A stretch of 63,764 bases of DNA, counting the filler, from Octopus bimaculoides (taxonomy: Eukaryota), in NCBI RefSeq assembly GCF_001194135.2. It is 3 parts of 3 records of this genome, joined end to end, with 100 filler letters (N's around TTAATTAATTAA, not from the genome) between each part and the next. Parts side by side here need not be neighbours in the genome. Positions count along the whole stretch, not along the records: positions 1 to 25,067 come from NC_069006.1; 2 more parts are not named here. One strand, given 5' to 3'. Under the pieces are notes generated by a model, which was given only the letters and a program-made list of their open reading frames with translations, was not told the origin of the DNA and searched no databases. Below, piece by piece: positions 1 through 23,837 of the stretch (positions are counted from its first letter, which is position 1; each line of letters starts with the position of its first letter). The translations under genes and the position numbers were made by a program.

Positions 1-127
1 AAAATAAACATCATCAATCATCACCACTTCCACAGCTTAATTAGCGAGTAATTAAAAGCGTTAATTGGCAATAGTGGAGTGGAGGTGTTCGTGGTTGTAT
101 TGGATCTGAAATAGCTACATGGCATAC

Positions 128-357
128 CTGTTATAATCGTAACCTCTTTTGTAAATCTTCTTCAGTGTCTTCATACGCTCTTTCACTTGGACCACGGATC
201 TCTGGATGCCTCTCTCAGACAGCTTCAGTCGGATGTATTCGTATACATGCCAATTCCTAATGCTATTCTCCAAATCCGTCTGGATCTCTTCATTACCCCA
301 TATGTCTATAAGATTCAACGTTTCGTTATCCGACCAATTCACTCCGCGTTGAGTCAT
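128..357 (-). CDS. Exon encoding a Myb/SANT-like DNA-binding domain (Myb_DNA-bind_4/trihelix, MSANTD/ZSCAN29-like); gene continues left of the window
   Basis: MTQRGVNWSDNETLNLIDIWGNEEIQTDLENSIRNWHVYEYIRLKLSERGIQRSVVQVKERMKTLKKIYK matches the W..(E)T..L...W.E..IQ..L....RN..VY..I...L...G..R...Q...(K/M)K.LK..Y pattern. ATG at 357-355 in ACCATG context. Donor CAG|GTATGC after 128 (phase 2). Confidence 0.85.
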
Positions 358-859
358 GGTCTAAATTTCTTAAATAACTTCCTTTTTAAATATATATATA
401 TATATACACACACACAGACAGATAGACAGCTAGATATTGTTATATATATAAACAAAGAATTTTTTTAAAGTATCTTTAAATATATATATATAACTATATA
501 TAAATGCACTATTTTTTCGTTCCTAATCGATTTATTTGATGCTATTGATTGCTAAATTGATTACTTAAAACATTTTTGTTTTTTTGTTTTCTTATTGCTT
601 TCTTAATCAATTTCGCTCTTTTATTTATTTTTTTCTTTTTGTGTTCATAGAAGTCAATTAATTCTGTTTGGGGGTGGGGGAAAACAACACAAATAAACGG
701 CCAAATGACACCTCAGTTTGCAAGAACGATATTTCTCTAATCAACTATCTTCTCCAAGACAAATTAATTGACGCTATATATATATACGTGTGAGCGTGTG
801 TGTGTGCATGTATATATAACAATAATATTAATTAAAGGCAGAAGGAGGGAGAAAGAGAG

Positions 860-1760
860 AGAGGCATCCACGAAAAAGCTCCCTGTCACGCGCATGTGCA
901 CGACTGACCAGCTTGTGAAACGAACAAAATAACAAAAACAGAGAGAAAGAACAGCAGCATGCTGGGAGTTGCCACCTCAACACGAGGGGGGGTAGCCCTG
1001 CTACTACAGTAGAAGGAAGAAAGGCTATTATAGTAGACAAGTATATAGTAGCCCTGCTACTATGTAATAATCAGTAAGTACCACTATCACAAGCAACAGC
1101 TAAATAGAGTAGAGATGCAAGATGTGATATTCCCCGAGCAGAGGGTGATTGCAAAGCAGCAAGGCTGATAATTTTGGTGACAGGTTCCGATCGATTTAAT
1201 CGGATCCTGGTCGCTTCAATGGTAATACTTTCTTTCTTGTTGTTTAGCCACAGGTCAAGTCTTTTCGAGCAGCCATATCACCATCACCATCACTACCATC
1301 ATCATCAAATATTTACAGCGTGACCAGCAATTTCTCCCCACGCCACCCGAGGTATGAAGGAGACTACATTCTGTAAAATGACTTTACCTGAAATAAGGAG
1401 GTACAGAGAGATTTAACGGAAGATTTAGGTACGGTTTCTAATAATTGACTAAGTAATGGCCAATTTTATTGAAGGTAATTTTAAAAGTGGATCTTACGAA
1501 GGACGTGTCCCTTTCTTCATTTCCGTCTTTCTTTCCCGAACAACCTTTCTAAATATGAAAATATGTGGATTCGGGAATTGCCACGACGGTGAGGAGAATT
1601 AATGTTTTGGGCATCCCAAAGGTGGTTTTACGCGTGACCAGAGAAGGAAGGAAACGAGAAGCGATTGAAGCGACTCTCTTGCAGGCTCAGATTTGAATAA
1701 ATGAAATTACTTAACACTTTTTGCTTAATTGCAACTCGCACCGGTTGTAAAATAACACTT
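860..1760 (-). promoter_or_regulatory. Candidate promoter/5' UTR region of the left Myb/SANT exon (interrupted by a repeat at about 1230-1460)
   Basis: Locally CpG-richer unique sequence. NRF1-like CGCGCATGTGCA near 889-900, GGGARTTGCCAC twice (964-975, 1573-1584), and a 15-bp direct repeat (992-1006, 1048-1062). Confidence 0.3.
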
Positions 1761-1944
1761 GATTAATTAATTATGTACGTATGCATGCATGCATGTATAT
1801 ATTCACACATGTATGCATACACACACACTTAGACGTATTTTTGTATACATACATACATGTATATACATATACACACACATACACACATGCATACACATAC
1901 ATATATACATACACATACACACAGATGTATACACACGTTCAGAC

Positions 1945-1981
<37 letters not shown>

Positions 1982-2023
1982 NNNNNNNNNNNNNNNNNNN
2001 NNNNNNNNNNNNNNNNNNNNTCA

Positions 2024-2069
<46 letters not shown>

Positions 2070-2119
2070 TACACACAGATGTATACACACACTCAGACAT
2101 GTTTATATATCAATAGGCA

Positions 2120-2545
2120 AAGAGGCTGAGTTCCTTTCGAGCACTGGGCCTCATGGAGGCAAAGTGGTTAAGTTCCTTTCAAGTGTTGGGCCTCACAGAG
2201 GCAATGGCCAAGACCTTTGGCGTTATGCCATGCATGAGAAGAAGACCCATCAAGCCGAGCAAAATTGCAGTCATGACAGATACCAGACCAGCGTCACACA
2301 AATTGGCACCTGTGCTGGTGGCACATAAACACACCCCAGTGTCACACAAATGACACCCATGCTGGTGACATGGAAGAGCACCCATTACACTCTCGGAGTG
2401 GTTGGCGTTAGGAAGGGCATCCAGCCATAGAAAACTACGCCAAATCAGACTGGAGTCTGGTGCAGACTTCCAGCGTGCCAGCCTGGTCAAGCCGTCCAAC
2501 CCATGCCAGCATGGACAACAGACGCTAAATGATGATGTTGATGAT
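2120..2545 (+). mobile_element. RTE LINE 3' end (RT C-terminal remnant, 3' UTR, (ATG)n tail)
   Basis: DLWRYAMHEK remnant followed by the same 3' UTR as 7476-8180 and a gatgat tail. Confidence 0.75.
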
Positions 2546-2759
2546 GATTTACATATCCACATTCACATATACACAGATGGACACATACATGTACAAATAC
2601 ATTTATAGATACATATTAATACGTGTATAAATGCATGTATAGAAATTTTCTGAGGAAAATCTTGAGAGAGCCTTCAAAATTTCAGGTAATTAGCTGTCAA
2701 CGTATAATGAACCGAGACTTTGAAGTCACTATCAAACTTTTCATGTTCAATTGTTTTCA

Positions 2760-3060
2760 TATCATTGGGACTCCAACAGTTACAATGACAAGGGTTCCAG
2801 TTGATCCGATCGATGGAACAGCCAGCTCGTCAAATTAACATGCAAGTGGCTGAGTACTCCACAGACGTGTACCCTTAATATAGTCCTCAGGAAGATTCAG
2901 CGCAACACAGAGTGTGACAAGGCTAGCCCTGAGTGGACTGGAGTAAAGTGCCTTGCTCAAGAACACAATGCATCACCAGGAATTGAACTCACAATCATGA
3001 GCCAAATACCCTAACCACTAAGCCACATACCCTAACCACTAAGCCACATACCTTCACTGT
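2760..3060. mobile_element. SINE fragments (tRNA-head SINE with CORE/V-like gtgtcttgagcaag block, minus strand, plus tail segment)
   Basis: gccttgctcaagaacacaa...aattgaactc is the reverse complement of the head seen at 6110-6250. Confidence 0.5.
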
Positions 3061-3650
3061 TTTCATATATACGCACACCTTGCACTGGTTTGGTCATGTG
3101 ATGCATGTGGATGAGGACAGCAGCATAAAGAAGTGCTGAGCTGTGGAGGGAACCAGTGGGAGGGGTAGACCCTCAGAGGTGTGGGATGAAATGGTGAGAA
3201 CGGATCTTCAGACGCTGGGCCTCAGAGGAAATAACAAGGGTCCAGGAGTTGTGACGCTTTGCAGTAGTTGGGAAGATGCATCAAGCTAAGTAAAACCATT
3301 GTCATCCATTCAATCAGGCATGTCCTTTATAGGTGCCAGTGCCACATGAATGCACTCATGCCAATGCCACATGAACGCACTCATTCCGGTGCCACATGAA
3401 TGCACTCATGCCAGTACCACATGAATGCACTCATACTGATGCCACATGAATGCATTCATGCAAATGCCACATGAATGCACTCATGCCGGTGCCACATGAA
3501 TGCACCCGGCACATTCTGTAAAGTGGTTGGCATAATGCCAACCACTTTACGGTCATCAAACCATGGAAACCATGTCAAAACAATTTAAGACAGGCCAGTT
3601 CCTGTCAAACGGTCCAACCCATATCAGCATGAAAAACAGATGCTGATGAT
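3060..3650 (+). mobile_element. Degenerate RTE 3' end with an internal 25-bp tandem array (about 7 units, 3336-3512)
   Basis: GHVMHVDEDS..KKC-like remnant, GCCACATGAATGCACTCATGCCAAT units, then the RTE 3' UTR and a gat tail. Confidence 0.7.
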
Positions 3651-3672
3651 GATATACACACATACATATATA

Positions 3673-4200
3673 GGTGCAAGTGTGACGGTGTGGTTAGAGG
3701 CTTACTTTCCAACCACATGATTTCCAGTTCAGTCCCACTGCATGGCACCTTCAGCAGGTCTCTTATACTATAGCCCTCGGCTGACCAAAGCCTTTTGAGT
3801 GAATTTGATAGATGGAAACTGAACGAAGCCCATCATGTGTGTGTGTGTGTGTGTTTAGTCCCACTGACACTGACAACCAGCGTTAGTGGGTTTATGTCCT
3901 CACAAGTTAGCAGTTCAGCAAAAAGAGATCAATAGAAGTACAAGGCATTAATAAATAAATACTGGTATTAATTCATTCAACTAAAATTCTTCAAAGTGGT
4001 GCCCCAGCATGGCCACAGTCTAATGACTGAAACAAGTAAAAGAGACATGGCCATGTGGTAAGAAGCTTGCTTCCCAACCACATGATTCAAGATTCAGTCC
4101 CACTGCATGGCACCTTGGGCAAATGTCTTCTACTATAGCCTCAGGCTGACCAAAGCCTTGTGAGTAGATTTGATAGACGGAAACTGAAAGAAGCCTGTCG
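3673..4200 (+). mobile_element. tRNA-derived SINE family A, two adjacent copies
   Basis: A-box/B-box head (tggctgtgtggt...ggttcagtccc), internal (TG)n, tail ...gactgaaacaagtaaaag. Confidence 0.8.
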
Positions 4201-4202
4201 TG

Positions 4203-4234
<32 letters not shown>

Positions 4235-4240
4235 GAAGAT

Positions 4241-5483
4241 GTGCAAGTTATTTGAGGATATACTTTTTTGGGGTTATTGCTGCATTTTTCGCTAATTCTG
4301 TATAATCTTTGTTTAAAAAAATAATCATGGCAGACCCGCAGCTTACTCAAGAAATGAAGGGGCATGCTGATATTGTGATTATAAAGGTTCAGCATGGTGA
4401 TTTAGAAATATCTCAATTTTTAAAAGTTGCCAGATCTTTTGTCTACAAAGTTTGTAAGGAGCTAAAGACTGAAGATAGAAATGTATCACCACTAGCAAAG
4501 CAAAACAAGCATTCTAAATGCTCTGAAATCATCAGAATACCTGAATTTATCCAGCAAGTTCAACAGACCATTTGATTACAATCCCAGAAAGTCCATGAGG
4601 TCAATTGCAAAAGATCTCCATGTGCCAGAAGTAACAGTCAGAAATGTTATCCATGAAGATATCAGATATAAGTCTTATATGATGAGGGAAAGTCAATTTG
4701 TCAGAAAAACCAAAGGAAAATCACTTCACCAGATTTAAAAGGCTCTTAAACAAACTGAAAAATCCAGTAGAAGAAGATTTGATTTTTCTCAATCAAGAAA
4801 AATTTCAACCAAGATCAAAAAGTTAACAGAAGAAATGACAGAAGATGGTTTTGTGCAGACCCTTCTGAAGTTCCAAGTGTTATGCATACAAAATTTCCTG
4901 CACCTGTCATGATTTTAGGGGTTGTTAGCAATGAAGGACATGCGATGCCTCCTTACTTCTTTCCGCAAGGCCTAAGAGTTAACTCTGCTGCTTACATTAA
5001 GGTCCCAGAAATAATTGCAAAGCCCTGGATAGACAGTGTATGCAATGGAAGGCCTTCAGTTAGTCTCTGCACTATCACACATGGCTCTAGTAACACAGAA
5101 ATGGATGGCTGAAAATTTTCATGATCATATAACCCCTAACATTTAGCCTCCTAATTCCCCAGTTTTCAATCCATTAGAATATTACATGTGGAGTGTTGTT
5201 GAGAGAGAAGTCAATGAACATGCCTATAACACCAAAGAATCTTTGAAAGCTGCCATAGTCAGAGTAATATCCAAAATGAACCAGAACCACTTGATTCAAG
5301 CATGGAGAGGATTTAGATCTCATATAGAAGCAGTTGTTGAAGCTGAAGGTGGCTTTATTGAATAACATTATAGAAAAGAAGGTTTATTTTTATCCTCATA
5401 GCATTTTTTGATAAATAAAGTTATCTGTTATTATATATTTGTTTTTTTTTATAAACATAAATCTGTCCTCAAATATCTTATGC
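4241..5483 (+). pseudogene. maT/DD37D-type Tc1-mariner transposon, disabled transposase
   Basis: Frameshifted pieces NFNQDQKVNRRNDRRW, KFPAPVMILGVVSNEGHAMPP and *PPNSPVFNPLEYYMWSVVER. Imperfect TIRs: gcaagttatttgagga at about 4243 and tcctcaaatatcttatgc at 5466-5483. Confidence 0.85.
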
Positions 5484-5719
5484 NNNNNNNNNNNNNNNNN
5501 NNNNNNNNNNNNNNNNNNNNNNNNNNNNNNNNNNNNNNNNNNNNNNNNNNNNNNNNNNNNNNNNNNNNNNNNNNNNNNNNNNNNNNNNNNNNNNNNNNNN
5601 NNNNNNNNNNNNNNNNNNNNNNNNNNNNNNNNNNNNNNNNNNNNNNNNNNNNNNNNNNNNNNNNNNNNNNNNNNNNNNNNNNNNNNNNNNNNNNNNNNNN
5701 NNNNNNNNNNNNNNNNATG

Positions 5720-5935
5720 TAACCACATGTGAATCGTTGGTGATTTTTTTACCTCCATCTTCCTTTTCTCCTGGACTTTCCTCCATCTCCTGTTTCTCAC
5801 GAAGAACTTTGCTTGAAACGTAAAACCACTTTTCTTTCCTTCCCTGAGTGTCTGCTAATACTTTTCATGTGTCACGTCCTCGCATTGTTGTTTTTTTCTT
5901 GTGTTTGTTCTTCATGTTTTGAATTTACTATATAT
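5720..5935 (+). mobile_element. PLE-type tail repeat, family F (degenerate copy)
   Basis: gaagaactttgcttgaaacgtaaaac...ctaatac is similar to 32450-32640, 34720-34890 and 45700-45880. Confidence 0.5.
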
Positions 5936-6090
5936 GCAAAGTATTAGCAGTTCATGCCAGTCACAAGGCTAAACATCTCTGAAAGTTTCATCCGAACCCA
6001 TTCAGTGGTTCTTGAGATATCTTGTCCACGGACAAACAAACAAACACAACTGAAAACAATACCTCCACCTTCACTAAAGTGGAGGGAATA
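5935..6090 (+). mobile_element. Helentron-associated (HINE/DINE-like) non-autonomous element end
   Basis: aagtttcatccgaa...gagatatc...gacaaacaaacaaaca...gaaaacaata followed by the terminal hairpin cctccac/gtggagg. Confidence 0.5.
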
Positions 6091-6109
6091 AAAATAAAGG
6101 ATATAATAT

Positions 6110-6450
6110 AAGGAGCAGGGCTCAGTGGTTAAAGTATCGGGCGTACAATCACGAGGTAATGAGTTTGATTCTCAGACTGGGCTGTGTGTTGTGCTCTTGA
6201 GCAAGACACTGTTTCATGTTGTTCCAGTTCACTCATCTGTAGAAATGAGTTGCTATGTCACTGGTGCCAGGCTGTATCGGTCTTTGCCTTTCCCTTGGAT
6301 ATCTTCAGTGGTGAAGGCTGGATAGCATGGTCTTCCATAAACAACCTTGCCTGGAATTGTGCCTCACAATGGAGCTTTCTAGGTGCAATCCCATCATCAT
6401 TCAATGACCTAAGGGGTCTTTACCCCTTATCCTATATACGTGTGTGTGTG
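6110..6450 (+). mobile_element. tRNA-derived SINE with CORE/V-like central block
   Basis: gctcagtggttaaag (A-box), gagtttgattc (B-box), then ttgtgctcttgagcaagacact. Confidence 0.6.
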
Positions 6451-7010
6451 TGTGTGTAGGCCAAGATATGGCTGTGTATTTAAGAAATTTGCTTTGGAAT
6501 TACACAGATTGCGATTTGCTCCCACCCCATGGTTGCTAATCAGCAGGTGCCCTTTGATTTCTTTATCCATCAGAAGCTGACAAATAACTTGTGAGCAAAA
6601 TCTGAGAGACAGAATCTGGAAGAGGTCCGTCATGTTTATAAGACTGTATTTTTATGTTTGTGTGTGTCTCATGAAGAGTGTAATCACCAAAGCTTAATCA
6701 TTTGTGCTGTGTCATTCACAAGAGGTCCTTTGCAAAAGCATATTATCTGAGTGACTTGATATGTCTTGGCATGAATCTGCTGATTATAAACAAAGTGTCA
6801 CTCTTCACACAAACAGTGTAGTCTGTTTACAGTTCTCCACAAAAGCAAATCCTGCTTGTTTAGACTGGCAGAATTGTTACCTTCTTTGGAAACAGGTGAA
6901 GGTCAACGACAGGAAGGGCATCCAACCGAAGAAGAAGCTGCCTCAATGAAGGCACATTTGATCCATGTAAATATGGAAAAGCAGACATTAATAACACGAT
7001 AGGATGATGC

Positions 7011-7047
<37 letters not shown>

Positions 7048-7082
7048 TATATATGTGTATATATGAATATATGTGTATGTAT

Positions 7083-8136
7083 ATGCTACATGGCAGTGAA
7101 ACATGGGCCGTGACTGCTGAGGACATGCATAAGCTTGCAAGAAACGAAGCTAGTATGCTCCGATGGATGTGTAATGTCAGTGTGCATACTCGACAGAGTG
7201 TAAGTACCTTGAGAGAAAAGTTAGACCTAAGAAGCATCAGTTGTGGTGTGCAAGAGAGACAAATACGCTGGTATGGTTATGTGGCGAGAATGGATGAGGA
7301 TAGCTGTGTGAAAAAGTGCCACACACTAGCAGTTGAGGGAACCTGTGGAAGAGGTAGACCCATGAAGACCTGGGATGAGCATGACCTTCGTACATTAGGC
7401 CTCACAGAGGCACTGACAAGCTACCAAGACCTTTGGAGATATGCTGTGCTTGAGAAGACCTGGCAAGCCAAGTGAGACCATAATCCGAGGCCTCTGCCAG
7501 GGGTGTAACCAGCCCACTTATGTGTACCTTTCTTTCATTGGACACTAAACTCTGCTTGCAAAGACCTGTTGAGGCAATCGAAATCGAACCAAATTCGACG
7601 ACTGGCACCTATGCCAACGTGTCCTTCATTGGACACTAAACTCAGCTTGCAAAGACCTGTTGGAGCAAGTGAAAGCAAAATCGTGATGGCACCTGTACCA
7701 GTGGAGCACTAAGAGGACCGTCCATGCATGATCGTTGCCAGAGCAGTTGTCTGGCTTCAGTGCCAGTGGCACGTAAATAGCACCATTTGAGCATGATCGT
7801 TACCTGCGTCGCCTTCCTGGCACTTGTGCCAGTGGCAGGTGAAAAGACATTTGAGCGAGATCGTTGCCAGTGCCGCTGGACTGGCTCCTGTGCAGGTGGC
7901 ACGTAAAATACACCACTTTGAGCGTGGCCATTGCCAGTACCGCTGGACTGGCCTTCATGCCAGTGGCACATAAAAGCACCCACTACACTCTCAGAGTGGT
8001 TGGTGTTAGGAAGGGCATCCAGCTGTAGAAACTCTGCCAGATGAGATTGGAGCCTCGTGCAGCCATCTGGTTTCACCAGTCCTCAGTCAAATCGTCCAAC
8101 CCATGCTAGCATGGAAAGCGGACGTTAAACGCTGCT

Positions 8137-8181
<45 letters not shown>
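7083..8181 (+). mobile_element. 5'-truncated RTE LINE: RT C-terminus (7083-7475), 3' UTR and (ATG)n tail
   Basis: MLHGSETWAVTAEDMHKLARNEASMLRWMCNV...RWYGYVARMDEDSCVKKC...GRGRP is a typical RTE RT end. Confidence 0.9.
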
Positions 8182-8190
8182 ATGCAGTGT

Positions 8191-8393
8191 TTAACCTTTT
8201 AGCATTCAGATTACTCAGTCAAACGCAATGCTTATTTATTCACATTGCTCTTAGCTTTGGCATTTTGATGATGTCATTGTTGATTTTTAGAATGACAATG
8301 TAGCATAGGTGTGAGGGGCCAGATCTGGCCAGTTTGAACATAAAACAGGTAGAATATTTGGGCAGGATATGGTCAGTTTAAATGCCAAAGGCT
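8191..8393. mobile_element. piggyBac-like MITE remnant
   Basis: TTAA-CC(T)TTTAGCATTC left end and aatgccaaagg right end. Same family as 11347-11480 and 26197-26961. Confidence 0.5.
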
Positions 8394-8515
8394 TGGGGAA
8401 ATGGAATATCATCCTAGCTGCAGCTGGTGAGAATCCCAAAAGCCCTTTAGCCTTTTGGGATCTTACTGATGATATGTATTTTAATTTATTGTAGCTTCAT
8501 TTACATACGCTGGAT

Positions 8516-8907
8516 CAGTGGTTCTCCAACCAGGGTCCACATGGCCCTTGGTGGATTCAGATTTTGTTGTTAAACTTTGGTTATACGTCTACAATACACA
8601 AAATATTCTTTTATTCTTTTACTTGTTTCGGTCATTTGACTGGCCATGCTGGACTGCTGCCTCAAAGGGTTTTAGTTGAACAAATGAACCCCAGGACTTT
8701 TTTTTTAAGACTAATACTTATCCTATCAGTCTCTTTTGCCAAACCACTAAGTTACGGGGACGTAAGCACACCAGCACCACAATTCCTAATAATATTTAAT
8801 TATGAAAATATAATATTATTTTTTAAACATCAAATACCTAGTGAGGTCCACTCAGGTAAAATAGGAATCAAAGGAGTCCATAGGTAAAAAATAGTTGGGA
8901 AGCACTG
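8516..8907. mobile_element. hAT (Charlie-like) MITE with a SINE A fragment inserted (8610-8780)
   Basis: TIRs cagtggttctccaac and gttgggaagcactg. Degenerate 8-bp TSD cgctggat/cactagat. Confidence 0.65.
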
Positions 8908-8959
8908 CACTAGATTATTTATTCAACCTGGGAGCCATTCACAATACTAATGAGTGTAT

Positions 8960-9272
8960 TCATCATCATCATCATAATCATCGTTTAACGTCCGCTTTCC
9001 ATGCTAGTATGGGTTGGATGATTTGACTGAGGACTGGTGAAACCAGATGGCTACACCAGGCTTCAATCTGATTTGGCAGAGTTTCTACGGCTGGATGCCC
9101 TTCCTAACGCCAACCACTCCGAGAGTGTAGTGGATGCTTTTACATGCCACCGGCACGAAGGCCAGTCGGGAGGTACTGGCAATGGCCACGCTCAAAATGG
9201 TGTCTTTTATGTGCCAGCTGCACAGGAGCCGGTCCAGGGGCACTGGCAACGATCTCGCTCGAAAGTCCCTCC
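8960..9272 (-). mobile_element. RTE 3' UTR/tail copy
   Basis: (CAT)n followed by cgtttaacgtccgctttccatgctag..., the reverse complement of 7900-8180. Confidence 0.85.
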
Positions 9273-10249
9273 GATATATACAGGGTGTTCAGGTTAAATT
9301 TTACAATTGTTAATGTCCCTTTTTTTTTTTTTTTTTTTTTCAGGAAAAGCATAATGTATTGGTGAACAATCAATGGTGTTGTGGAGCATAAAGATTAAAA
9401 AAAAATTGGCCAACATGGAGGACTGAATATTGGAAAAGATTTACCTATATCATAATGATTCATANNNNNNNNNNNNNNNNNNNNNNNNNNNNNNNNNNNN
9501 NNNNNNNNNNNNNNNNNNNNNNNNNNNNNNNNNNNNNNNNNNNNNNNNNNNNNNNNNNNNNNNNNNNNNNNNNNNNNNNNNNNNNNNNNNNNNNNNNNNN
9601 NNNNNNNNNNNNNNNNNNNNNNNNNNNNNNNNNNNNNNNNNNNNNNNNNNNNNNNNNNNNNNNNNNNNNNNNNNNNNNNNNNNNNNNNNNNNNNNNNNNN
9701 NNNNNNNNNNNNNNNNNNNNNNNNNNNNNNNNNNNNNNNNNNNNNNNNNNNNNNNNNNNNNNNNNNNNNNNNNNNNNNNNNNNNNNNNNNNNNNNNNNNN
9801 NNNNNNNNNNNNNNNNNNNNNNNNNNNNNNNNNNNNNNNNNNNNNNNNNNNNNNNNNNNNNNNNNNNNNNNNNNNNNNNNNNNNNNNNNNNNNNNNNNNN
9901 NNNNNNNNNNNNNNNNNNNNNNNNNNNNNNNNNNNNNNNNNNNNNNNNNNNNNNNNNNNNNNNNNNNNNNNNNNNNNNNNNNNNNNNNNNNNNNNNNNNN
10001 NNNNNNNNNNNNNNNNNNNNNNNNNNNNNNNNNNNNNNNNNNNNNNNNNNNNNNNNNNNNNNNNNNNNNNNNNNNNNNNNNNNNNNNNNNNNNNNNNNNN
10101 NNNNNNNNNNNNNNNNNNNNNNNNNNNNNNNNNNNNNNNNNNNNNNNNNNNNNNNNNNNNNNNNNNNNNNNNNNNNNNNNNNNNNNNNNNNNNNNNNNNN
10201 NNNNNNNNNNNNNNNNNNNNNNNNNNNNNNNNNNNNNNNNNNNNNNNNN

Positions 10250-12287
10250 CTGTGGGTAGATGTAGCATGGCCAAATGATTAAGAAGTTTACTTTGCAATC
10301 AAAAGACAACAGGTTCAATCTCACAGTGTGGCATCATGGGACGAGTATTTTTTTCATAGACTCAGGTTGACCCAAGCCCTTTAAACAAAATAGGGTCGAA
10401 GGGACTTGTGTGGAAGCTCATCAGATGAACTGTACATGTAAACTGAGGGACATATGAGTGTGAAGTACTCAGCCACAAATACACTAACATGTTTGGGAAC
10501 ATAAACAGACATAGAAGCTGCACCCCAGTTTTAGTGCATACGACACAGACTCTGTCTTTCATCCTTTCAGGGTTGGTAAAATATATTTCTTTATTGCCCA
10601 CGAGGGGCTAAACATAGAGGGGACAAACAAAGGATTAAGTCGATTACATCGACCCCAGTGCATAACTGGTACTTATTTAATAGACCCCAAAAGGATGAAA
10701 GGCAAAGTCGACCTCGGCGGAATTTGAACTCAGAACGTAACAGCAGACGGAATAGTGCTAAGCATTTCGCCCGGCGTGCTAATGCTTCTGCTAGCTTGCC
10801 GCCTTGGTAAAATAAGTAGCAGTTAAACACTGGGGTCAATGTAATTAACTACTCCTGGGCATGAGTATAAAAGAAACTGCACCCCTCTGCAAGGCCATGT
10901 TGAAGCAGTGTGATAGAGTACACTCATCAAACCAGTATGATATGGCCCCCACATCAGACCATGGTTGGGTGGAGAGAACATGCTGACAGCCTTGTACTGT
11001 AGTGGACTGAACATGAGCAACCCCAAAATGCTGCATCTCTCTGCCAAGCCATGTTGAGCTCAAACTCTCCAGCTCAAACTCATAGTCCCCACATCAGACC
11101 CTAGTTGGTGGAGAAAACATGCTGAGGCCTTTGTCCAACAGTGGACTAAAACATAGGCAATCCAATATAGATCCACCTTCACATATAGAGGGCAGGATGA
11201 CATTTGGGTGGGGGGGAAGAAAAAGAAAAGAAAAAGTGTGTCTGATATGCCATCAAATATGGAAATTTAATGAGCAAGAAGTTCCAGTTGAGTAAACAGA
11301 AAAGTCACGACATGAAATCATGACCAAGATCCATTTTTATTGTTGTTTAACCCACTAGCCTTTAAACCAGCCATATTCAGCCGAAATATTTTCCCTGTTT
11401 TATGTTCAAAATGGCCTGATCTGGCCTCTCACACCTTCTCTGCAACGTTATTCTATAAAGAAACAATCACATCATCAAACTGTACCAGTAAGTTGAGGAA
11501 ACAAGTGATTAAATTGACCCCAGTCTGCAACTGGTACTTACTTTATTGACCCCCAAAAGGATGAAAGGCAAAGTCAACCTTGGTGGAATTTGAACTCCAC
11601 CAGTCCTCAGTCAAATCGTCCAACCCATGCTAGCATGGAAAGCGGACGTTAAACGATGATGATGATGATGATGATGATGAATGTAAGACTACATAAAATG
11701 CCTGTAAGCATTTCGCCTGAAATGCTAACAATTCTGCCAGCTTTTGCAGCCTTGTAATAATAATAATAATAATTAAAGGTCTCATATTTTGGGGAGAGGG
11801 ACTAAGTTGATTACATCAACCCCAGCGTTTCACTGGTACTTAATTTATCGATCATGAAAGGATGAAAGGCAAAGTCAACCTCAATGGAAATTGAACTCAG
11901 AATGTTAACAGAGATGAAATGCCATTAAGCATTTTGCCCAGGTGTGATAACGACGCTGCCAACTCACTGCCTTACAACATGAGGAAGTATTACCGTGCTC
12001 GGACGCAAGAAGGGTGTCCGGCTTTAGAAAATCTGCCTCAACAAATTCCATTTATCACTCCACTCTCCACCCACCTTGCAAGCATGGAAAAGTGGACATA
12101 AAAACAACACTGATTTACTAATTAGGCACAAGCATAGCAGTGCAATAAGAAGCTTGCTTCCCAACTACAAGGTTCTGGGTTCAGTCCTACTGCATGGCAC
12201 CATGGGCAAGTATCTTCTACTATAGTCTCAGGCCAACCAAAGCCTTGTGAGTGGATTTGGTAGATGGAAACCGAAAGAAGCCTATCA

Positions 12288-12320
<33 letters not shown>

Positions 12321-14120
12321 ATATATCTGTCCGTGTTTGTGTTTGACCCTCACCACCACTTGACAACCAGTGTTAGTGTGTTTACACCTCTATAACTTAG
12401 TGGTTCAGCAAAGGAAACTGATAAAATAAGTACCCAGCTTAAAAAAAAAAAAAAAAAAAAAAAGAAATTGTATTCTTGACTGTCATCATTCAACGTCCGT
12501 TTTCCATGCTGACAAACCAGATAATTCTGCTTAGCCATCTTTTTTAATAATTTCAAGTTTAGGCACAAGGCCAGCAATTTTGAGGGGAGGGTGTTTAGTC
12601 AACTCTATTATTTGTCTGTTACTTTATTGACTCTGAAAGGATGAATAGCAGAGTTGACCTTGGCAGGATTTGAACTCAAAACGTAAACAGCAGGTGTAAG
12701 CATGTCAGCATGGGTGAGGAACCTGCTTTCCAACCATGTGGTCTAGGGTTCAGTCCCACTGCACTGAACACTGGGCAAAAGTCTTCTAAAACAGCCCCAG
12801 GGCAACCAAAGCCTTTTGAGTGGATTTTGTAGATGAAAACTGAAAGTAGCCTGTCATATACAGGTGTGTGTGTGTTTGTGTGTGTGCCTATGCGTGTATA
12901 CCGTATCTGCCTCCAACGCTTGACAACTGGTGTTGGTCTGTTTACATCCACATGACTTAGCAGTTCAGAAAAAAATGAACTGACAGAATAAATATCAAAT
13001 TTAGAAAATAATGAGTACTTGAGTAAATTCCTTTGACTAAACTCTTCAAAGCAGTGCCCCAGCTTGGCCAGTGACTGAAACAAGTAAAAAAATGCATGAT
13101 AAAAGAACAAATACTACTATGTAATTTTGACCAATGCTCGGAAGATCCTGCCAAAACCACTCTTTAAATAATTTATTATTCTTTTACTTGTTTTGGTCAT
13201 TTGACTGTGGCCAAGCTGGAGCACCACTTAAAGAAATTGACCCCAGGACTTATTCTTTGTAAGCCTAGTACTTATTCTATTCTATTCTTTTGCCGAACTA
13301 CTAAGTTATGGGGACATAAACACACACATACATATATATATATACGACGGGCTTCTTTCAGTTTCCGTCTACCAGATCCACTCACAAGGCCTTGCTCCGC
13401 CTGAGGTTATAGTAGAAGACACTTGCTCAAGGTGCCACGCAGTGGGACTGAACACGGAACCGTGTGGTTGGGAAGCAAGGTTCTTACCACACAGCCACGC
13501 CTGCGCCTATTACCTAAATAAAAGGCAAAAAAATACAGGGGAAAGGAACAGTCAGTTATACTGTTCGTAATACTTGGCTATTTTTCAAAGAGGCTTACTG
13601 GTAGAATCGTCAGCACACCGAACAAAATGTTCAGCGGTATTTCGTCCGTTTTTTACGTAGAGTTCAAGTTCCGCTGAGGGCAAGTTTGCCTTTCATCAGT
13701 TCGAGGTCTATAAAATAAGCACCAGCTGAGGGCTGTGGTCGATGTAATTGACTGAACCCCTCCCCCGAAATTGCTGGCCTTGTGCCAAAATTTAAAACTA
13801 ATATTTGACTATTTTTACCGAACAAGGAAGAAAGGCAAAACTGACCTCGACGGGACTTGAACTATAAAGAAATTGAATAAATACCGCAAGATATTTTGCC
13901 AAACGCTTTAAAGATTTATCTGTAAATTACCCTGAATTTCCAACATAAGCACCGCAGTAGAAGTTTGAAGAGTACGCCGACCCAAGTACTTGACTGGTCC
14001 TGTAGTTTATCGATTCCGGGCGAATGAAAGACAACGCTGACCACGTCGGGATTTGAAGTGAGATCACAGAAGGCCGGGAGAAATACTGCAATGCATTTTG
14101 TTCGAGGTTTTAACGATTCT
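10250..14120. mobile_element. Dense SINE field. SINE A: 10250-10560, 12124-12450, 12690-13090, 13170-13510. SINE B (Meta-domain-like): 10590-10806, 11460-11980, 12560-12690, 13590-14120. An RTE tail is inserted at 11598-11680.
   Basis: Recurrent blocks gccgaggtcgactttgcctttcatcc (SINE B) and ggttcagtcccactgc..ggcaagtgtcttctactatagcc (SINE A). Confidence 0.8.
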
Positions 14121-15078
14121 GTAAATCCAACGAACATTTAAATGTCGTAGTATTTTAACTATAACCTACGTTAAAACGGCAAGCAATGGTTGGTCAAGAG
14201 TTTTTTGATAAAGAAAAAACAATTAGTAAATTAATAACAACGCTATTAATAATTAGTTGATGAGTAGAAATGAAAATTTTTGGTGTATGTGCGTGAATGT
14301 ATGGATGTGTGTGTGTGTGTGTGTGTCCAACCACTCCAAAAAGAGGGAAGTAACTCTCATTTAAAAACCGGATATTTCTCAATTTGTTTTTGAAAAAAAA
14401 ATAATTGTTTTTAAATTTACCACCAAACACAGTACAATTATATAACTGTTAAAATTAGAATTAATCAATTAGTATACAAACCATATATATATATATATAC
14501 ATTTAGATGATTAGAATAGTAAATAATGAAATGCTATAACAATAAATATTTAAGAGGAAACAACAGTGACCAAGCACCGGTTAAGCTCACCACGTATTTA
14601 CATGATAGAGTGTAAAATTTTCTCAAATATATATACACCTATCTAATATTTACCATTGATAATAATAAATCGATTTGTCCCAGTCGGTTCTTGACAAGCC
14701 ATAAAAACCCATTATTTCATTACAAGAGTTTTAATAACATTTATAGGCTTCTGATGTAACAGTAACCACAAGCATATAAAGGGGGAGGTGCCGGAGGTTC
14801 TTCTCAGTTCCTAAAGCAAATATAAACGTAGTTTCCTGAAGCAATATTACTTCCGATCTTCCACTATACATTATGATTGCATTTAATGTAAACCTAAAAA
14901 CAAAATCTGATAGATATGCTGAACGGGAAAGAGAGAAATATATATAAGTATTTCGTTATTTGGAATGTTTTTAATTTCCAATGGCAAGGGGGGGTTTTTT
15001 ATGCGGACAAATCAGATAATCGGGCATAGATAGTTTCAAAATAGCAACAATAATGGTTTTATAAAACATGCCTCATAC

Positions 15079-15305
15079 CTCTCGATATCGATATATTTTT
15101 TATAAGTCTTCTTCAAAGTTCTCATCCGTTCCTTAACCTGAGGAACTGTCCTCTGAATACCCCTTTCCAATAACTTCTGGCGTATAAGTTCATAAATATG
15201 TCTATTCCTACAACTTTCGAGTCCCTCTTGGATTTCCTCTTCGCCCCAAACATTAATGAGTTCAAATGTCTCGTTGTCGGTCCAATTTTGGCCACGTTCG
15301 GTCAT
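15079..15305 (-). CDS. Second, paralogous Myb/SANT-like DNA-binding domain exon
   Basis: MTERGQNWTDNETFELINVWGEEEIQEGLESCRNRHIYELIRQKLLERGIQRTVPQVKERMRTLKKTYKKYIDIER is about 50/77 identical to the 128-357 exon. Donor GAG|GTATGA after 15079, at the same codon and phase. Confidence 0.85.
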
Positions 15306-15564
15306 TCTTTGGGAGATAGTAGTCAACATGTAATATGCATGTGACTCCCAGCTCACTAACAACAGAGTGTTGCATGATGGGAGTCGTTTAGCCAGGATAA
15401 CTGTTCTTCGCCAATGAATGATATATATACATACACACATACACATATATATATATATATACATAAACATACACACACACATATATAAATATATATATAC
15501 TCATGCGCAACTACACACACATATACACAGACACGCACATACATATATATATATAACAAACGAA

Positions 15565-15618
<54 letters not shown>

Positions 15619-16939
15619 NNNNNNNNNNNNNNNNNNNNNNNNNNNNNNNNNNNNNNNNNNNNNNNNNNNNNNNNNNNNNNNNNNNNNNNNNNNNNNNNNN
15701 NNNNNNNNNNNNNNNNNNNNNNNNNNNNNNNNNNNNNNNNNNNNNNNNNNNNNNNNNNNNNNNNNNNNNNNNNNNNNNNNNNNNNNNNNNNNNNNNNNNN
15801 NNNNNNNNNNNNNNNNNNNNNNNNNNNNNNNNNNNNNNNNNNNNNNNNNNNNNNNNNNNNNNNNNNNNNNNNNNNNNNNNNNNNNNNNNNNNNNNNNNNN
15901 NNNNNNNNNNNNNNNNNNNNNNNNNNNNNNNNNNNNNNNNNNNNNNNNNNNNNNNNNNNNNNNNNNNNNNNNNNNNNNNNNNNNNNNNNNNNNNNNNNNN
16001 NNNNNNNNNNNNNNNNNNNNNNNNNNNNNNNNNNNNNNNNNNNNNNNNNNNNNNNNNNNNNNNNNNNNNNNNNNNNNNNNNNNNNNNNNNNNNNNNNNNN
16101 NNNNNNNNNNNNNNNNNNNNNNNNNNNNTTTTCTTCTTTTTTTGACATAACATTTTAAACCTTTTCATAACTCGAAATAAAAGTAGTTGATTTGATGAAA
16201 ATTACTTGGCTATTCTATTTATGAAAATAAAGTATACAATTTGATATGTATATATATTAGATATCGATATTACTTTTTCGTGTTAGTCATTGGACTGCGG
16301 CCATGCTGGAGCACTTTTTCAATAAACGAATTTTATTTTTATTTGAAATAAATGTGTACAATATATATATATATATATATAATATACATGCGAATATTCT
16401 TCCTCCAATAACATGAAATATGTTTACATAATATTTTTTCATAACTTGAAATAAAAACGTAATTATACATATATATTGTAATCGAAGTATAATTTCATTT
16501 AAAAGTTGTGTATTTTCACAACTTTAAAAAAGATATTTTTGATATATACAGAAAGTATTTTTTTAAAGTTGTGAAAATATACAACTTTATTGTCTTTTAT
16601 TTTTAAAAACTAGGATTTGCAGTTGTTACGACAAACATTTCGTTGTCAAATCAAATCGATCGATAAATATATAATGACAAATGATGGAATGACTTATTAG
16701 ATTTGGCTGATGGATACTTTTCTTGATTTCTTAACTTTTTCGTAATAAATTGTAAATAACGGTCAAGAAATGTCCAAGTAATAAAAGGAAAATTAAAGAA
16801 CTATGCAATTTAATATAAATACTAATTAATTATTAGGTTCTTTTACATAAAGTTTTTCGGCTGTAATAGATGGGAGTGAAACTGTTGTTGTGGTTGTTCG
16901 TCTTTCATTAGTTTTTACGTTGATTTAAATCCTTCATCT

Positions 16940-17275
16940 TTATCTTTTGTTTGTTTCAGTCATTGGACTTCGGTCACACTAGGGCACCACTTTGGAGGGT
17001 TTTAGTCGAACGAATCAACCCCAGTACTTATTTTTTTAAGCTTCGCCACGCAGTCAGTTTACGGGGACGTAAACAAACTAACACCGGTTCCAAGCGGTGG
17101 AGGATAAACACCAAAACATACACCGAAATATACACAGAAAATTTCCAGTTTCTGTTTACCGAATGTACGCACAAGGCATTTGGGCACTCTGAGGCTATAG
17201 TAGAAAATACTTGCCCAAGGTGCCACGCAATGTGACTGAACCTGGTCGGGGGGCAACCTTCTTACCACACACCCA
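16940..17275 (-). mobile_element. SINE A copy
   Basis: Reverse complement of the family A body. Confidence 0.75.
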
Positions 17276-17791
17276 TAATTTCTTATTATTATTATTTCTT
17301 CTTTCCAATATCACAGTGAAATACGCCAATTCTTAATTTTAACGAAGCACCTTGTCGGAGAGAATAATCAGTTTTGTATCGCCATTTACGGTTTCAAATA
17401 CTAGACCGCGGCGACCGTGCTGGAGCACTAACTTCTTTGAGGATTTTTTGGTTGATTATTTCTATCTTCTTCATCTATTTCATGCTGGTTCTTTTCTCTT
17501 TTTTTTTTCTCCCCGATTTCTGCCTCGTAAGGTTTCGTTTCCTTCTGACATTGAGGGAAGCAACTCGATGCACTGTTTTACACAGGTAAGGAACCAGGCA
17601 CATACGTTCGTACGTACGTACATACTTACATGCATGCAAACATACATACATACATACGAGCGTACGTACATACATGCATACACGTGGATACATACATATA
17701 TACAAGTGTACGTTCATACATATATATATATACATGCATGTATACATATATACATACGCTCATACATATAGAGATACACAGACGCATGCGT

Positions 17792-17839
<48 letters not shown>

Positions 17840-18234
17840 TAATCTTCAAGTTTAGGGGGATGAAAAAAATAAATAAAAATATTCAAGGGAAATAACTGAA
17901 CGACTTACCAGTATTATCCGTTTTCTTCTAGCNNNNNNNNNNNNNNNNNNNNNNNNNNNNNNNNNNNNNNNNNNNNNNNNNNNNNNNNNNNNNNNNNNNN
18001 NNNNNNNNNNNNNNNNNNNNNNNNNNNNNNNNNNNNNNNNNNNNNNNNNNNNNNNNNNNNNNNNNNNNNNNNNNNNNNNNNNNNNNNNNNNNNNNNNNNN
18101 NNNNNNNNNNNNNNNNNNNNNNNNNNNNNNNNNNNNNNNNNNNNNNNNNNNNNNNNNNNNNNNNNNNNNNNNNNNNNNNNNNNNNNNNNNNNNNNNNNNN
18201 NNNNNNNNNNNNNNNNNNNNNNNNNNNNNNNNAT

Positions 18235-18679: not shown

Positions 18680-18880
18680 GGTTCTAAATTTTGGTAGAAA
18701 GCCAGTAATTTCAGAGGAGGGGGCAAGTCGGTTATATCAACCCCATTACTCAATTAGTATTTATTTTATCGGCCCTGTAAGCACAAAAGGAGGTCAACTT
18801 CGACGGAATTTGAACTCTGAACATAAAACTAGCTGAAATGTTGCTGAGCATTTTCCCATTGGGCTAACAAATCTCTGCAG
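18680..18880 (-). mobile_element. SINE B copy
   Basis: aggtcaacttcgacggaatttgaactc block. Confidence 0.7.
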
Positions 18881-21519: not shown

Positions 21520-21845
21520 ACCATTTTGAGCGTGGCCGTTGCCAGTACCGCCTGACTGGCTCCTGTAGGATTTTCGAGCGAGATCGTTGCCAGTGCCCCT
21601 GGACTGGCTTGTGCGGGTGGCACATAAAAGACACCATTTCGAGCGTGGCCGTTTTCGTGCGGGTGACACGTAAAAGCACCCACTACACTCTCTGAGTGGT
21701 TGGCGTTAGGAAGGGCATCCAGCTGTAGAAACTCTGCCAAATCAGACTGGAGCCTGGTGTTGCCATCCGGTTTCACCAGTCCTCAGTCAAATCGTCCAAC
21801 CCATGCTAGCATGGAAAGCGGACGTTAAACGATGATGATGATGAT
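21520..21845 (+). mobile_element. RTE 3' UTR/tail copy (young subfamily, near-identical to 48361-48605)
   Basis: Shared gttttcgtgcgggtgacacgtaaaagcacc junction. Confidence 0.85.
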
Positions 21846-22139
21846 ATATGTATTTAAGTAAATAAAGTTAGATAAGGCCGGTTTATGGGTTTACCCTAGA
21901 TTTCACGGCATATCATCAGATTTCAAAACCTCTTGGCTTATGGCCTCTCCAGAATATGGAGGAGGAAAGGACCTTGCTACTCAAAGACAATAACAGGCTA
22001 TTGATCACCAGTGACCCTGTAATCCTGTGGGTTCCAATAGGTCAGCAGGAATTCTTGAAATGCCAGCATAGTCTGAAGATCTGTGTTCTGATGTTAAGGC
22101 TCTTTACCTGGGTCAAGAGAATCCTTTAGAATCCTCACC

Positions 22140-22700: not shown

Positions 22701-23059
22701 TTCATGCAGGGACCACAACAGATGCTCAGTGAGAGGCAACGGCAAAACCAAGAGAGCCAACCCTAATAATAGCAACAAATCAGTTTTGAATGTGAATTAA
22801 TCTTCACTCTCCTCTTGGTTTTCAATAATATATATGTAGTGGCTTCATGCAGGCAGAGAGTGAATTCAATCCTCGATAGTCAAATTTCACTCAGCAGTTT
22901 AACAGCACTTTAACAGCACTTTTCTCACGGTAAAACAATAGTTTTTCTGTGAGTGACAGTAGTTACATTTACCAGATGCCTTCACTAAGTGGAATAATGT
23001 CATTGCCACTTGACCCTTCTAACTTCTTCCATTTCACCAATGGCTAGAATAGAGATATC

Positions 23060-23820: not shown

Positions 23821-23837
23821 CATTTTTATTTAATCAT

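What the first reader, a model, noticed from the sequence alone, without database searches (positions are those of the whole stretch)
128..15305. Two diverged Myb/SANT DNA-binding exons with an identical phase-2 donor and no visible separate C-termini: possible variable-exon transcription factor locus
Seen: both minus-strand exons start at their own ATG with the same N-terminus (MTQRG/MTERG) and are about 50/77 identical. Both end in the same split Arg codon (AG|GTATG). Synonymous sites look saturated: Q-V-K-E-R is CAA GTG AAA GAG CGT in one and CAG GTT AAG GAA CGG in the other. This indicates an old duplication under purifying selection. Each ATG has an acceptor-like AG 1-3 nt upstream (tttag|ACCATG, ctcccaaag|AATG). 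Established: Myb_DNA-bind_4 domains normally continue with an SG...CPF(Y/F).ELD.ILG segment, and many such genes derive from Harbinger Myb-like ORFs. I found no such continuation, and no Harbinger transposase, in the readable 14.7 kb between the exons. Inference: these may be tandem genes whose later exons lie in gaps. Alternatively, they may be alternative (promoter-choice or mutually exclusive) DNA-binding exons spliced to one shared 3' exon left of the window, like a variable-exon array that switches DNA specificity.
Basis: partly seen in the sequence, partly recalled or inferred. Interest (0 to 1): 0.7.

Follow-up and report, generated by a model that had tools for sequence, protein, structure and literature searches.

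The report
Two tandem Myb/SANT first exons
Two old, still-selected copies of the first coding exon of a trihelix-type Myb/SANT DNA-binding protein lie 15 kb apart on the same strand. They are most likely two ordinary tandem genes whose later exons are unread, and the idea that they share later exons could not be tested here.

Summary
Window 357..128 and 15305..15079 (minus strand) each start at an ATG and hit Pfam Myb_DNA-bind_4 well above its cut-off. They are 66% identical in protein, with saturated synonymous sites. Both stop at a phase-2 AG|GTATG donor about three quarters of the way through the domain.

Exon B has an orthologue in a second species with collinear flanks and dN/dS of about 0.03. 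Two intronless pseudogene relatives in that species run straight across the donor position into ...ER|KGG(H/Q)K..C.FF(D/E)KLDE.., which is the missing end of the domain. So the donors are very probably real, and the next exon encodes that tail.

No such tail exists on either strand of the readable window. About 1.06 kb of the 14.7 kb between the exons is unread.

Whether B has its own hidden second exon or skips over exon A to shared exons left of the window cannot be decided here. I favour ordinary tandem genes (0.5) over alternative first exons (0.3), mainly on base rates.

The "switches DNA specificity" idea is weakened, because the recognition helix is the most conserved segment between A and B (17/21). 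Mutually exclusive internal exons are excluded in coding terms: the acceptor phases differ, and a direct B-to-A splice gives a stop. Interest is low to moderate.

The parts
128..357 (-). Exon A: the first coding exon of a trihelix-type Myb/SANT protein. It encodes MTQRG...DYN(R), 76 codons plus 2 nt, covering helices 1-3 including the recognition helix.
   Evidence: Pfam PF13837 at 55.5 bits. AlphaFold model with helices at 10-20, 23-31, 36-48 and 55-75. Kozak-like ACCATGA, with an in-frame TAG 3 nt upstream.
122..127 (-). Donor of exon A: AG|GTATGC, phase 2. Read-through would stop after 3 more codons (YAM*).
15079..15305 (-). Exon B: the paralogous first coding exon. It encodes MTERG...IDIE(R), 75 codons plus 2 nt.
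   Evidence: Pfam PF13837 at 60.0 bits. Orthologue L001/P0001 is 97% identical in protein, with dN 0.011 and dS 0.387.
15073..15078 (-). Donor of exon B: AG|GTATGA, phase 2. The orthologue has AG|GTAGGA, which stops the open frame at once.
   Evidence: Homology to the intronless relatives L002 and L004 ends exactly at 15078.
15306..15420 (-). Conserved block upstream of exon B, bounded by a microsatellite. It holds ATTGG (an inverted CCAAT) about 105 nt before the ATG. It then has 49 nt with a single difference from the orthologue, including an in-frame ATG at 15329 and a TTGAC...pyrimidine run...AG that looks like an acceptor. It is a candidate promoter/5'UTR or 3' splice site.
   Evidence: The function is inferred, not shown.
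358..15078 (-). A 14.7 kb interval that is either intron or intergenic. It is repeat-rich, has three assembly gaps (1982-2020, 5484-5716, 9465-10249), and contains no readable exon for the end of the domain.

Best explanation
These are two anciently duplicated tandem genes for small trihelix-type Myb/SANT (Pfam Myb_DNA-bind_4) nuclear proteins.

What the window shows is only the first coding exon of each gene. Each exon starts translation at its own ATG and encodes helices 1-3 of the DNA-binding domain, including the recognition helix. Each is spliced from a phase-2 donor (AG|GT, a split Arg codon) to a second exon. That second exon supplies the last segment of the domain (approximately G-KGG.K..C.FF[DE]KLDE[VA][LF]) and the rest of the protein.

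Exon A's later exons lie left of the window. Exon B's later exons lie in unread or misplaced sequence between the two exons; the 785-N gap at 9465-10249 is the main candidate.

Shown: the domain identity, the purifying selection, the orthology of B, the conservation of the donor, and the content of the missing tail in relatives.

Inferred: that the donors are used in vivo, that each gene has its own downstream exons, and that the products bind DNA.
For: - Domain and fold: Pfam hits are far above the cut-off but truncated at profile position 68-71 of 89. The closest solved relative by sequence and by fold is the Arabidopsis GT-1 trihelix domain: E 1.8e-4 and TM 0.69, probability 1.0.
- Selection: A versus B differences are 21/14/49 by codon position, and 0 of 20,000 random-substitution trials reach the observed protein identity. 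B versus its orthologue has dN/dS 0.011/0.387, with flanks collinear at 81%.
- Donor: GT is kept in A, B and the orthologue, while the read-through tails differ (YAM*, YEACFIKPLLLLF*, and an immediate stop).
- Content of the next exon: L002 and L004 are intronless relatives, 76-78% identical to exon B. They align up to exactly 15078 and then continue as KGGHKMCCFFDKLDEVLC and KGGQKKTCRFFEKLDEAF. Family members align to this as the end of the domain.
- Family consensus after the exon end is ...RSSGRGRKTCKFYDELDAILG.
- Start exons: the ATG is conserved in A, B and L001. There is an A at -3 in both, and a TAG just upstream of A.
- Base rate (my own knowledge): whole-gene tandem duplicates are far commoner than homologous alternative first coding exons. 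Exons lost in gaps are common in draft short-read assemblies with this gap density (six gaps in 25 kb).
Against: - No tail exon was found in the 13.66 kb of readable sequence between the exons, on either strand, by four methods. This includes 4.8 kb of uninterrupted sequence directly downstream of B's donor.
- Only about 7% (nominal) of the interval is unread, so this explanation needs the exon to sit just there, or needs an assembly error.
- No transcript or annotated protein containing either exon exists in the protein collections searched. Expression and exon linkage are therefore unshown.
Confidence: 0.5

Rival explanations
1. One transcription unit with two alternative first coding exons, chosen by promoter. 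On this view only exon 1 and its promoter were duplicated inside a long first intron. B's intron 1 (at least 15 kb) runs past exon A, and both phase-2 donors join one shared acceptor left of the window. The two isoforms would differ in helices 1-2 and the loops of the Myb/SANT domain but share the tail and C-terminus. This is a minimal Pcdh/UGT1A-like arrangement.
For: - No separate tail exon for B was found in 93% of the interval.
- Both donors are in the same phase with identical AG|GTATG.
- Both exons keep their own ATG.
- Exon A has a poor acceptor (purine-rich aagttatttaagaaatttag), and including it after B would give a stop (AGA CCA TGA), so it would have to be skipped.
- B has a conserved promoter-like block upstream.
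Against: - The shared exon has not been seen.
- Gaps could hide B's own exon.
- Homologous alternative first coding exons are rare (my own knowledge).
- There are only two exons, and none further in the 9.8 kb upstream.
- The recognition helix is nearly identical (17/21), so a switch in specificity is not indicated.
- The orthologue's donor is GTAGG, so the GTATG identity between A and B is not itself conserved.
Confidence: 0.3
2. The exons are not spliced at all. Each would be a stand-alone short ORF (76-97 aa, helices 1-3 only), or a truncated relic of an originally intronless gene like L002/L004 whose homology simply breaks at this point.
For: - A stop follows within 0-13 codons of the supposed donor in A, B and L001.
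- The exon alone gives a fairly confident four-helix model (pLDDT 77).
- Relatives without an intron at this point exist.
- No transcript evidence was found.
Against: - GTA is kept right at the break in three sequences, and the break is at the same codon and phase in paralogues that are otherwise saturated.
- The C-terminal read-through differs completely between orthologues (13 residues against 0) although the rest has dN/dS 0.03.
- The family-wide fourth segment would be missing.
Confidence: 0.08
3. Both exons are internal repeats of one long multi-Myb/SANT gene, like the fish proteins with up to 8-10 repeats.
For: - The best-scoring database proteins are multi-repeat: P0002 from Megalops atlanticus has 8 stretches and P0022 has 10.
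- B has an acceptor-like site 1 nt before its ATG. It is in phase 2, in frame with the family donor, and perfectly conserved in the orthologue.
Against: - A's only acceptor-like AG is in phase 0, and its AG is part of an in-frame TAG.
- A B-to-A join gives a stop.
- A Met kept at the same position in both copies is not a family feature.
- No tail exons lie between the two exons and no further repeats are in the window.
Confidence: 0.05

Closest known systems
Animal Myb/SANT-like DNA-binding domain-containing proteins (Pfam Myb_DNA-bind_4). Examples are the Amphimedon protein XP_011408995.1, 'zinc finger protein with KRAB and SCAN domains 2-like / Myb/SANT-like DNA-binding domain-containing protein', and the vertebrate ZSCAN20/29, ZKSCAN2 and MSANTD-type domains.
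   Same: The domain family is the same. There are 1,959 relatives at E<=1e-3, and single-domain proteins of 200-320 aa are 45-53% identical to the exons. The expected continuation ...GR.RK.W.[FY][FY]..LD.ILG is present in relatives.
   Different: No full-length product is known here. The nearest full-length relatives are at most about 53% identical. The intron lies 6 codons downstream of the position seen in L007 and in fish genomic ORFs (...FKQ| and ...FRQ|) and is in phase 2 instead of phase 0.
Plant trihelix factor GT-1 DNA-binding domain (PDB 2JMW, 2EBI)
   Same: It is the closest solved structure by sequence (E 1.8e-4, residues 2-73 of 86) and by fold (TM 0.69, rmsd about 2 Å, probability 1.0).
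   Different: Identity is only 27-28%, and these are plant proteins. This is a resemblance in fold, not orthology. The exon stops before the last about 13 residues of the solved domain.
Variable first-exon clusters (clustered protocadherins, UGT1A)
   Same: There are tandem paralogous exons on the same strand. Each has its own ATG and a donor of one phase. No partner exon is visible between them.
   Different: There are only two exons. No constant exon has been seen. No promoter element is shared between A and B. The variable part is a DNA-binding domain whose recognition helix hardly varies. The description of those clusters is from my own knowledge.
Myb-like ORF of PIF/Harbinger transposons and the genes domesticated from it (MSANTD2 family, NAIF1; PMC9392472)
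   Same: It has a Myb/SANT/trihelix-type domain. The multi-copy decayed relatives (L002, L004) are reminiscent of a mobile or retrocopied origin. Processed pseudogenes of such genes are known (MSANTD2P1, PMC9392472).
   Different: No DDE_Tnp_4 transposase or any Harbinger feature was found in the window. Exon B sits at an orthologous, selected host locus. Descent from Harbinger was not tested.

Membership tests
Pfam Myb_DNA-bind_4 (PF13837), trihelix-type Myb/SANT domain | Profile match above the curated gathering score | tested here: met
   A scores 55.5 bits and B 60.0 bits against a cut-off of 27.
Pfam Myb_DNA-bind_4 (PF13837), trihelix-type Myb/SANT domain | Helical bundle with a long third (recognition) helix, GT-1-like fold | tested here: met
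   The model has pLDDT 77 and helices at 10-20, 23-31, 36-48 and 55-75. The top Foldseek hits are GT-1 2EBI and 2JMW, TM 0.69. hmmsearch against the PDB gives GT-1 at E 1.8e-4.
Pfam Myb_DNA-bind_4 (PF13837), trihelix-type Myb/SANT domain | C-terminal segment of the domain (profile positions about 72-89, ...[FY][FY]..LD..LG) | tested here: not met
   It is absent from both exons and from all six frames of the readable window. It is present in the intronless relatives L002 and L004 and in exon 2 of L007, so it is presumed to lie on an unseen exon.
Variable first-exon cluster (Pcdh/UGT1A type) | Tandem paralogous exons on the same strand, each with its own start codon and a donor of the same phase | tested here: met
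   There are two exons, ATGs at 357 and 15305, and both donors are phase 2.
Variable first-exon cluster (Pcdh/UGT1A type) | No private downstream exons between the variable exons | tested here: inconclusive
   None was found in 13.66 kb of readable sequence. 1,057 nominal bases in three gaps are unread.
Variable first-exon cluster (Pcdh/UGT1A type) | Shared constant exon(s) with one acceptor used by all variable donors | not testable with these tools
   It would lie left of position 1. No transcript and no flanking sequence were obtainable.
Variable first-exon cluster (Pcdh/UGT1A type) | A promoter in front of each variable exon | tested here: inconclusive
   B has a conserved 115-nt block upstream with an inverted CCAAT. 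A has only an AT-rich microsatellite and no orthologue for comparison. No motif is shared between the two upstream regions.
Mutually exclusive internal exons | Both exons have acceptors of the same phase, compatible with a common upstream coding exon | tested here: not met
   A's AG at 362-361 gives phase 0 and B's AG at 15308-15307 gives phase 2.
PIF/Harbinger element (Myb-like ORF plus DDE transposase) | A DDE_Tnp_4-type transposase ORF next to the Myb-like ORF | tested here: not met
   Pfam scans of the larger ORFs and stop-free stretches gave no such hit. The only transposase trace is a decayed Tc1/mariner type on the opposite strand. The test was limited to 19 fragments.
Processed pseudogene (for L002/L004 in the related species) | No intron at the parental intron position, disabled reading frame, polyA tail and target-site duplications | tested here: inconclusive
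   Intron absence, frameshifts and stops are met. PolyA tail and duplications are not testable because the contigs end. The two copies share at least 1.26 kb at 72% identity, which would also fit a transposable element.

The most novel reading that the evidence does not exclude
The two exons are alternative, promoter-selected first coding exons of a single gene. Both donors would join one constant exon that completes the trihelix domain. This would be a Pcdh/UGT1A-style variable-exon arrangement applied to the DNA-binding domain of a transcription factor, possibly with more variable exons further upstream of the window.
Probability: 0.3. Interest if true: 0.55.

Novelty: new member of a known kind. 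Interest (0 to 1): 0.3.

Why it matters
As it stands, this adds two apparently unannotated, selected members to a very large and poorly studied animal family of Myb/SANT (trihelix-type) proteins. It also shows that their intron sits at a different place from the one seen in other members.

If the two exons shared downstream exons, this would be a rare case of a DNA-binding domain diversified by a choice of first exon. It would also give a simple system for asking what the non-recognition surfaces of a trihelix domain do. That reading is cheap to test with existing RNA-seq data or a long-read assembly.

Tried and rejected
1. Search for the missing domain tail in the window. I used two regular expressions in six frames, an HMM built from 256 family tails run with --max against all stop-free fragments, tblastn with 149 relatives, and tblastn and blastn-short with the L002 tail. 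All gave only noise. A CCYFETI string just after B's donor (15049-15029) looked like CCFFDKL, but it is not conserved in the orthologue, so I rejected it.
2. Search for transcripts or annotated proteins holding either exon. Three homologous-protein runs and the full HMMER representative search found only short genomic ORFs from other species.
3. Exact look-ups of the window's own ORFs, to get flanking DNA or gap-spanning contigs. None is on record.
4. Flank similarity between A and B, meaning duplicated promoter or intron sequence. Only microsatellite matches appeared.
5. An upstream exon homologous to the 5' part of L002/L004. None is in the window.
6. Harbinger transposase or other domains in the ORFs of the interval. 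There were no Pfam hits above threshold.
7. Rfam and tRNA scans found nothing.
8. Literature searches for the domain in octopus and for the SRA run numbers found nothing.
Full report
**What is there**

On the minus strand, window 357..128 (exon A, 230 nt) and 15305..15079 (exon B, 227 nt) each open with an ATG. Each ends two bases into an Arg codon, directly before GTATG.

Both translations hit Pfam Myb_DNA-bind_4, at 55.5 and 60.0 bits against a gathering score of 27. The match covers only profile positions 2-68 and 2-71 of 89, so the domain is cut at the donor.

The two peptides are 51/77 identical. tblastn finds no third copy in the window. No assembly gap touches either exon; the nearest gaps are 1982-2020 and 15619-16128.

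**More than chance, and under selection**

Differences between A and B fall 21/14/49 on codon positions 1/2/3. Of 47 identical degenerate residues, 33 use different codons. dN is 0.25, while dS is undefined by NG86 and 4.2 by ML, which means it is saturated. When the same number of substitutions is placed at random, 0 of 20,000 trials keep the observed protein identity and only 4% stay stop-free. Outside the exons the two copies share nothing but microsatellites. The duplication is old, and both copies were kept by selection for most of that time.

Exon B has an orthologue. This is a 1.3 kb genomic contig from another species (L001, Logan run SRR11869384). It is collinear with window 15383..14485 at 81% identity. 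Within the exon there are 15/228 nucleotide differences but only 2 amino-acid changes, giving dN 0.011, dS 0.387 and a ratio of about 0.03. The downstream intron is 84% identical overall, with indels, and only 73% over its first 99 nt. No orthologue of exon A was found, so A's present-day constraint is inferred only from its intact frame.

**The donors are very probably real**

GT follows the same codon position in A (CAG|GTATGC), in B (GAG|GTATGA) and in the B orthologue (AAG|GTAGGA). The read-through tails are unrelated: YAM*, YEACFIKPLLLLF*, and an immediate stop.

Two further contigs from the related species, L002 and L004, carry a disabled relative with stops and frameshifts. These come from proteins P0112 and P0153, and each is seen in several runs. 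The relative is 76-78% identical in DNA to exon B from 15286 to exactly 15078. It then runs on without an intron...FDNER|KGGHKMCCFFDKLDEVLC in L002 and ...IDSER|KGGQKKTCRFFEKLDEAF in L004. Family members align to that stretch as the end of the domain. It also matches the family consensus after the exon end...RSSGRGRKTCKFYDELDAILG.

So the partner exon of A and B should begin with G and encode roughly KGG.K..C.FF[DE]KLDE... L002 and L004 are either retrocopies of a third paralogue or copies of a mobile element. They share at least 1.26 kb at 72% identity, and their roughly 900 bp of upstream sequence matches nothing in the window.

**Start exons, not internal repeats**

The Met at position 1 is kept in A, B and L001, although it is not a family feature. 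Both ATGs have an A at -3. A has an in-frame TAG 3 nt upstream.

Joining B's donor to A's AG reads AGA CCA TGA, a stop. This rules out A and B as consecutive coding exons, and it rules out mutually exclusive internal exons fed by a coding upstream exon.

The best-scoring database proteins are fish multi-repeat proteins, for example Megalops atlanticus KAG7454542.1 with 8 repeats. That ranking reflects summed repeat scores, not a closer relationship.

**An unexplained detail upstream of exon B**

The 49 nt immediately upstream of B's ATG differ at one base from the orthologue. That is more conserved than the exon itself. This stretch contains an in-frame ATG at 15329 (MLTTISQR-) and a branch-point, pyrimidine run and AG arrangement. 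About 105 nt before the ATG there is an inverted CCAAT box. The whole conserved block is bounded by a microsatellite. It could be a promoter with 5'UTR, a 3' splice site, or an N-terminal extension.

**Fold and likely function**

A model of exon A has mean pLDDT 77 and four helices, at 10-20, 23-31, 36-48 and 55-75. Its closest solved structures are the Arabidopsis GT-1 trihelix DNA-binding domain (2EBI and 2JMW; TM 0.69, probability 1.0) and then Drosophila Zeste. GT-1 is also the only significant PDB match by sequence (E 1.8e-4).

The exon therefore holds the whole three-helix core, including the recognition helix. The unseen exon adds the last, packing segment. Sequence-specific DNA binding is inferred from family membership and was not tested.

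Between A and B the recognition-helix segment is the most conserved part (17/21, against 13/20 and 19/28 elsewhere). This speaks against the idea that the two exons confer different DNA specificities.

**Where is the next exon?**

The tail is absent from every frame of the readable window. Directly downstream of B's donor there are 4.8 kb of uninterrupted sequence without it. The rest of the interval consists of three further contigs separated by gaps of 785, 233 and 39 N.

The interval is largely interspersed repeats, plus a decayed Tc1/mariner-type remnant on the other strand. No Harbinger transposase is present.

No transcript, annotated protein or same-species contig containing either exon could be retrieved.

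**Weighing the explanations**

If these are two complete tandem genes, B's tail exon must sit in the roughly 7% (nominal) of the interval that is unread, or in a misassembled piece. I put the chance of that at perhaps 0.1-0.2, given six gaps in 25 kb.

If only exon 1 was duplicated and both donors use one acceptor left of the window, the data follow directly.

Against that stands the prior. From my own knowledge, tandem whole-gene duplicates outnumber homologous alternative first coding exons by a wide margin.

My estimates are:
- Tandem genes: 0.5.
- Alternative first exons: 0.3.
- Unspliced short ORFs or truncated relics: 0.08.
- One multi-repeat gene: 0.05.
- Other: the remainder.

**Comparison with what is known**

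The exons are clear members of the Myb_DNA-bind_4 / trihelix-type Myb/SANT family. This family is widespread in animals, with 1,959 relatives at E<=1e-3 that include sponge and fish proteins. Some vertebrate members are documented domestications of Harbinger Myb-like genes (PMC9392472). Descent from Harbinger was not tested here.

One difference from other members is the intron position. A third-species homologue (L007) has a 60-nt phase-0 intron after ...KKSFKQ|. Fish genomic ORFs lose homology after ...CFRQ|. The donor in the window lies 6 codons further on and is in phase 2.

**Verdict**

The features are a new member or members of a known kind, and interest is low to moderate. RNA-seq junctions or a gap-free assembly would settle the question at once.

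Noticed in passing
window 15306-15354 (minus strand): The 49 nt directly upstream of exon B's ATG differ at one base from the other-species orthologue. That is more conserved than the exon itself (93%) or the intron (73-84%). The stretch holds an in-frame ATG at 15329, a short conserved upstream ORF (ATG CAT ATT ACA TGT TGA), and a branch point, pyrimidine run and AG. Its function is unknown.
   Followed up: partly
L002:1-1272 and L004:1-1301 (Logan runs SRR11869391, SRR11869385, SRR11869390, SRR11869394): Two copies, 72% identical over at least 1.26 kb, of an intronless and disabled relative of exon B. About 900 bp of shared upstream sequence matches nothing in the window or in the protein family. 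They are either retrocopies of a third paralogue or a transposable element carrying a Myb-like ORF.
   Followed up: partly
L007:239-720 (Logan run SRR13325282): A homologue in a third species with a 60-nt phase-0 intron after ...KKSFKQ|. Its second exon encodes ACDKRRTTGQMAIKCHYFDELSEILGNRPAIQPP and is followed by another GTAAGT donor. Fish genomic ORFs break at the same place. So the widespread intron position is 6 codons upstream of the donor in the window.
   Followed up: partly
window 4306-5362 (+ strand): A decayed Tc1/mariner-type transposase spread over three frames, ending ...PPNSPVFNPLEYYMW.... Pfam gives only sub-threshold hints (HTH_Tnp_Tc3_2 at E 0.09 and the C-terminal end of DDE_3 at E 0.035). 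It ends about 120 bases short of the 5484-5716 gap.
   Followed up: partly
window 2358-2548, 7846-8153, 8960-9268, 21568-21845; also 3687-4214, 12123-12451, 12713-13089, 13176-13497, 17142-17270, 24155-24550; also 10632-10814, 11503-11597, 11799-11973, 13579-13759, 18725-18853: At least three families of short interspersed repeats (67-96% identity between copies, in both orientations) fill much of the sequence between and around the two exons. No tRNA or Rfam match explains them.
   Followed up: partly
window 7047-7472, 22098-22729, 23398-23841 (+ strand): Open stretches that look like retroelement remains. Examples are ...FLDVMLDLGSGTYRPYHKPNERLTYINTASCHP... and ...CIDRIAVNSRDRSCF.... None has a Pfam hit, so this reading rests on my own recollection only.
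   Followed up: partly
window 1781-2130, 15430-15618, 17630-17900 and other places: Long TA/TG/TATG microsatellite tracts flank most of the assembly gaps. The 39-N gap at 1982-2020 lies inside one such tract, so the gaps are probably repeat-caused.
   Followed up: no
P0002, P0003, P0005, P0022 (proteins): Fish proteins carry 7-10 tandem Myb_DNA-bind_4 repeats behind a conserved N-terminal domain, for example Megalops atlanticus KAG7454542.1 (1,594 aa). This is a striking architecture, but it is unrelated to the question in hand.
   Followed up: no
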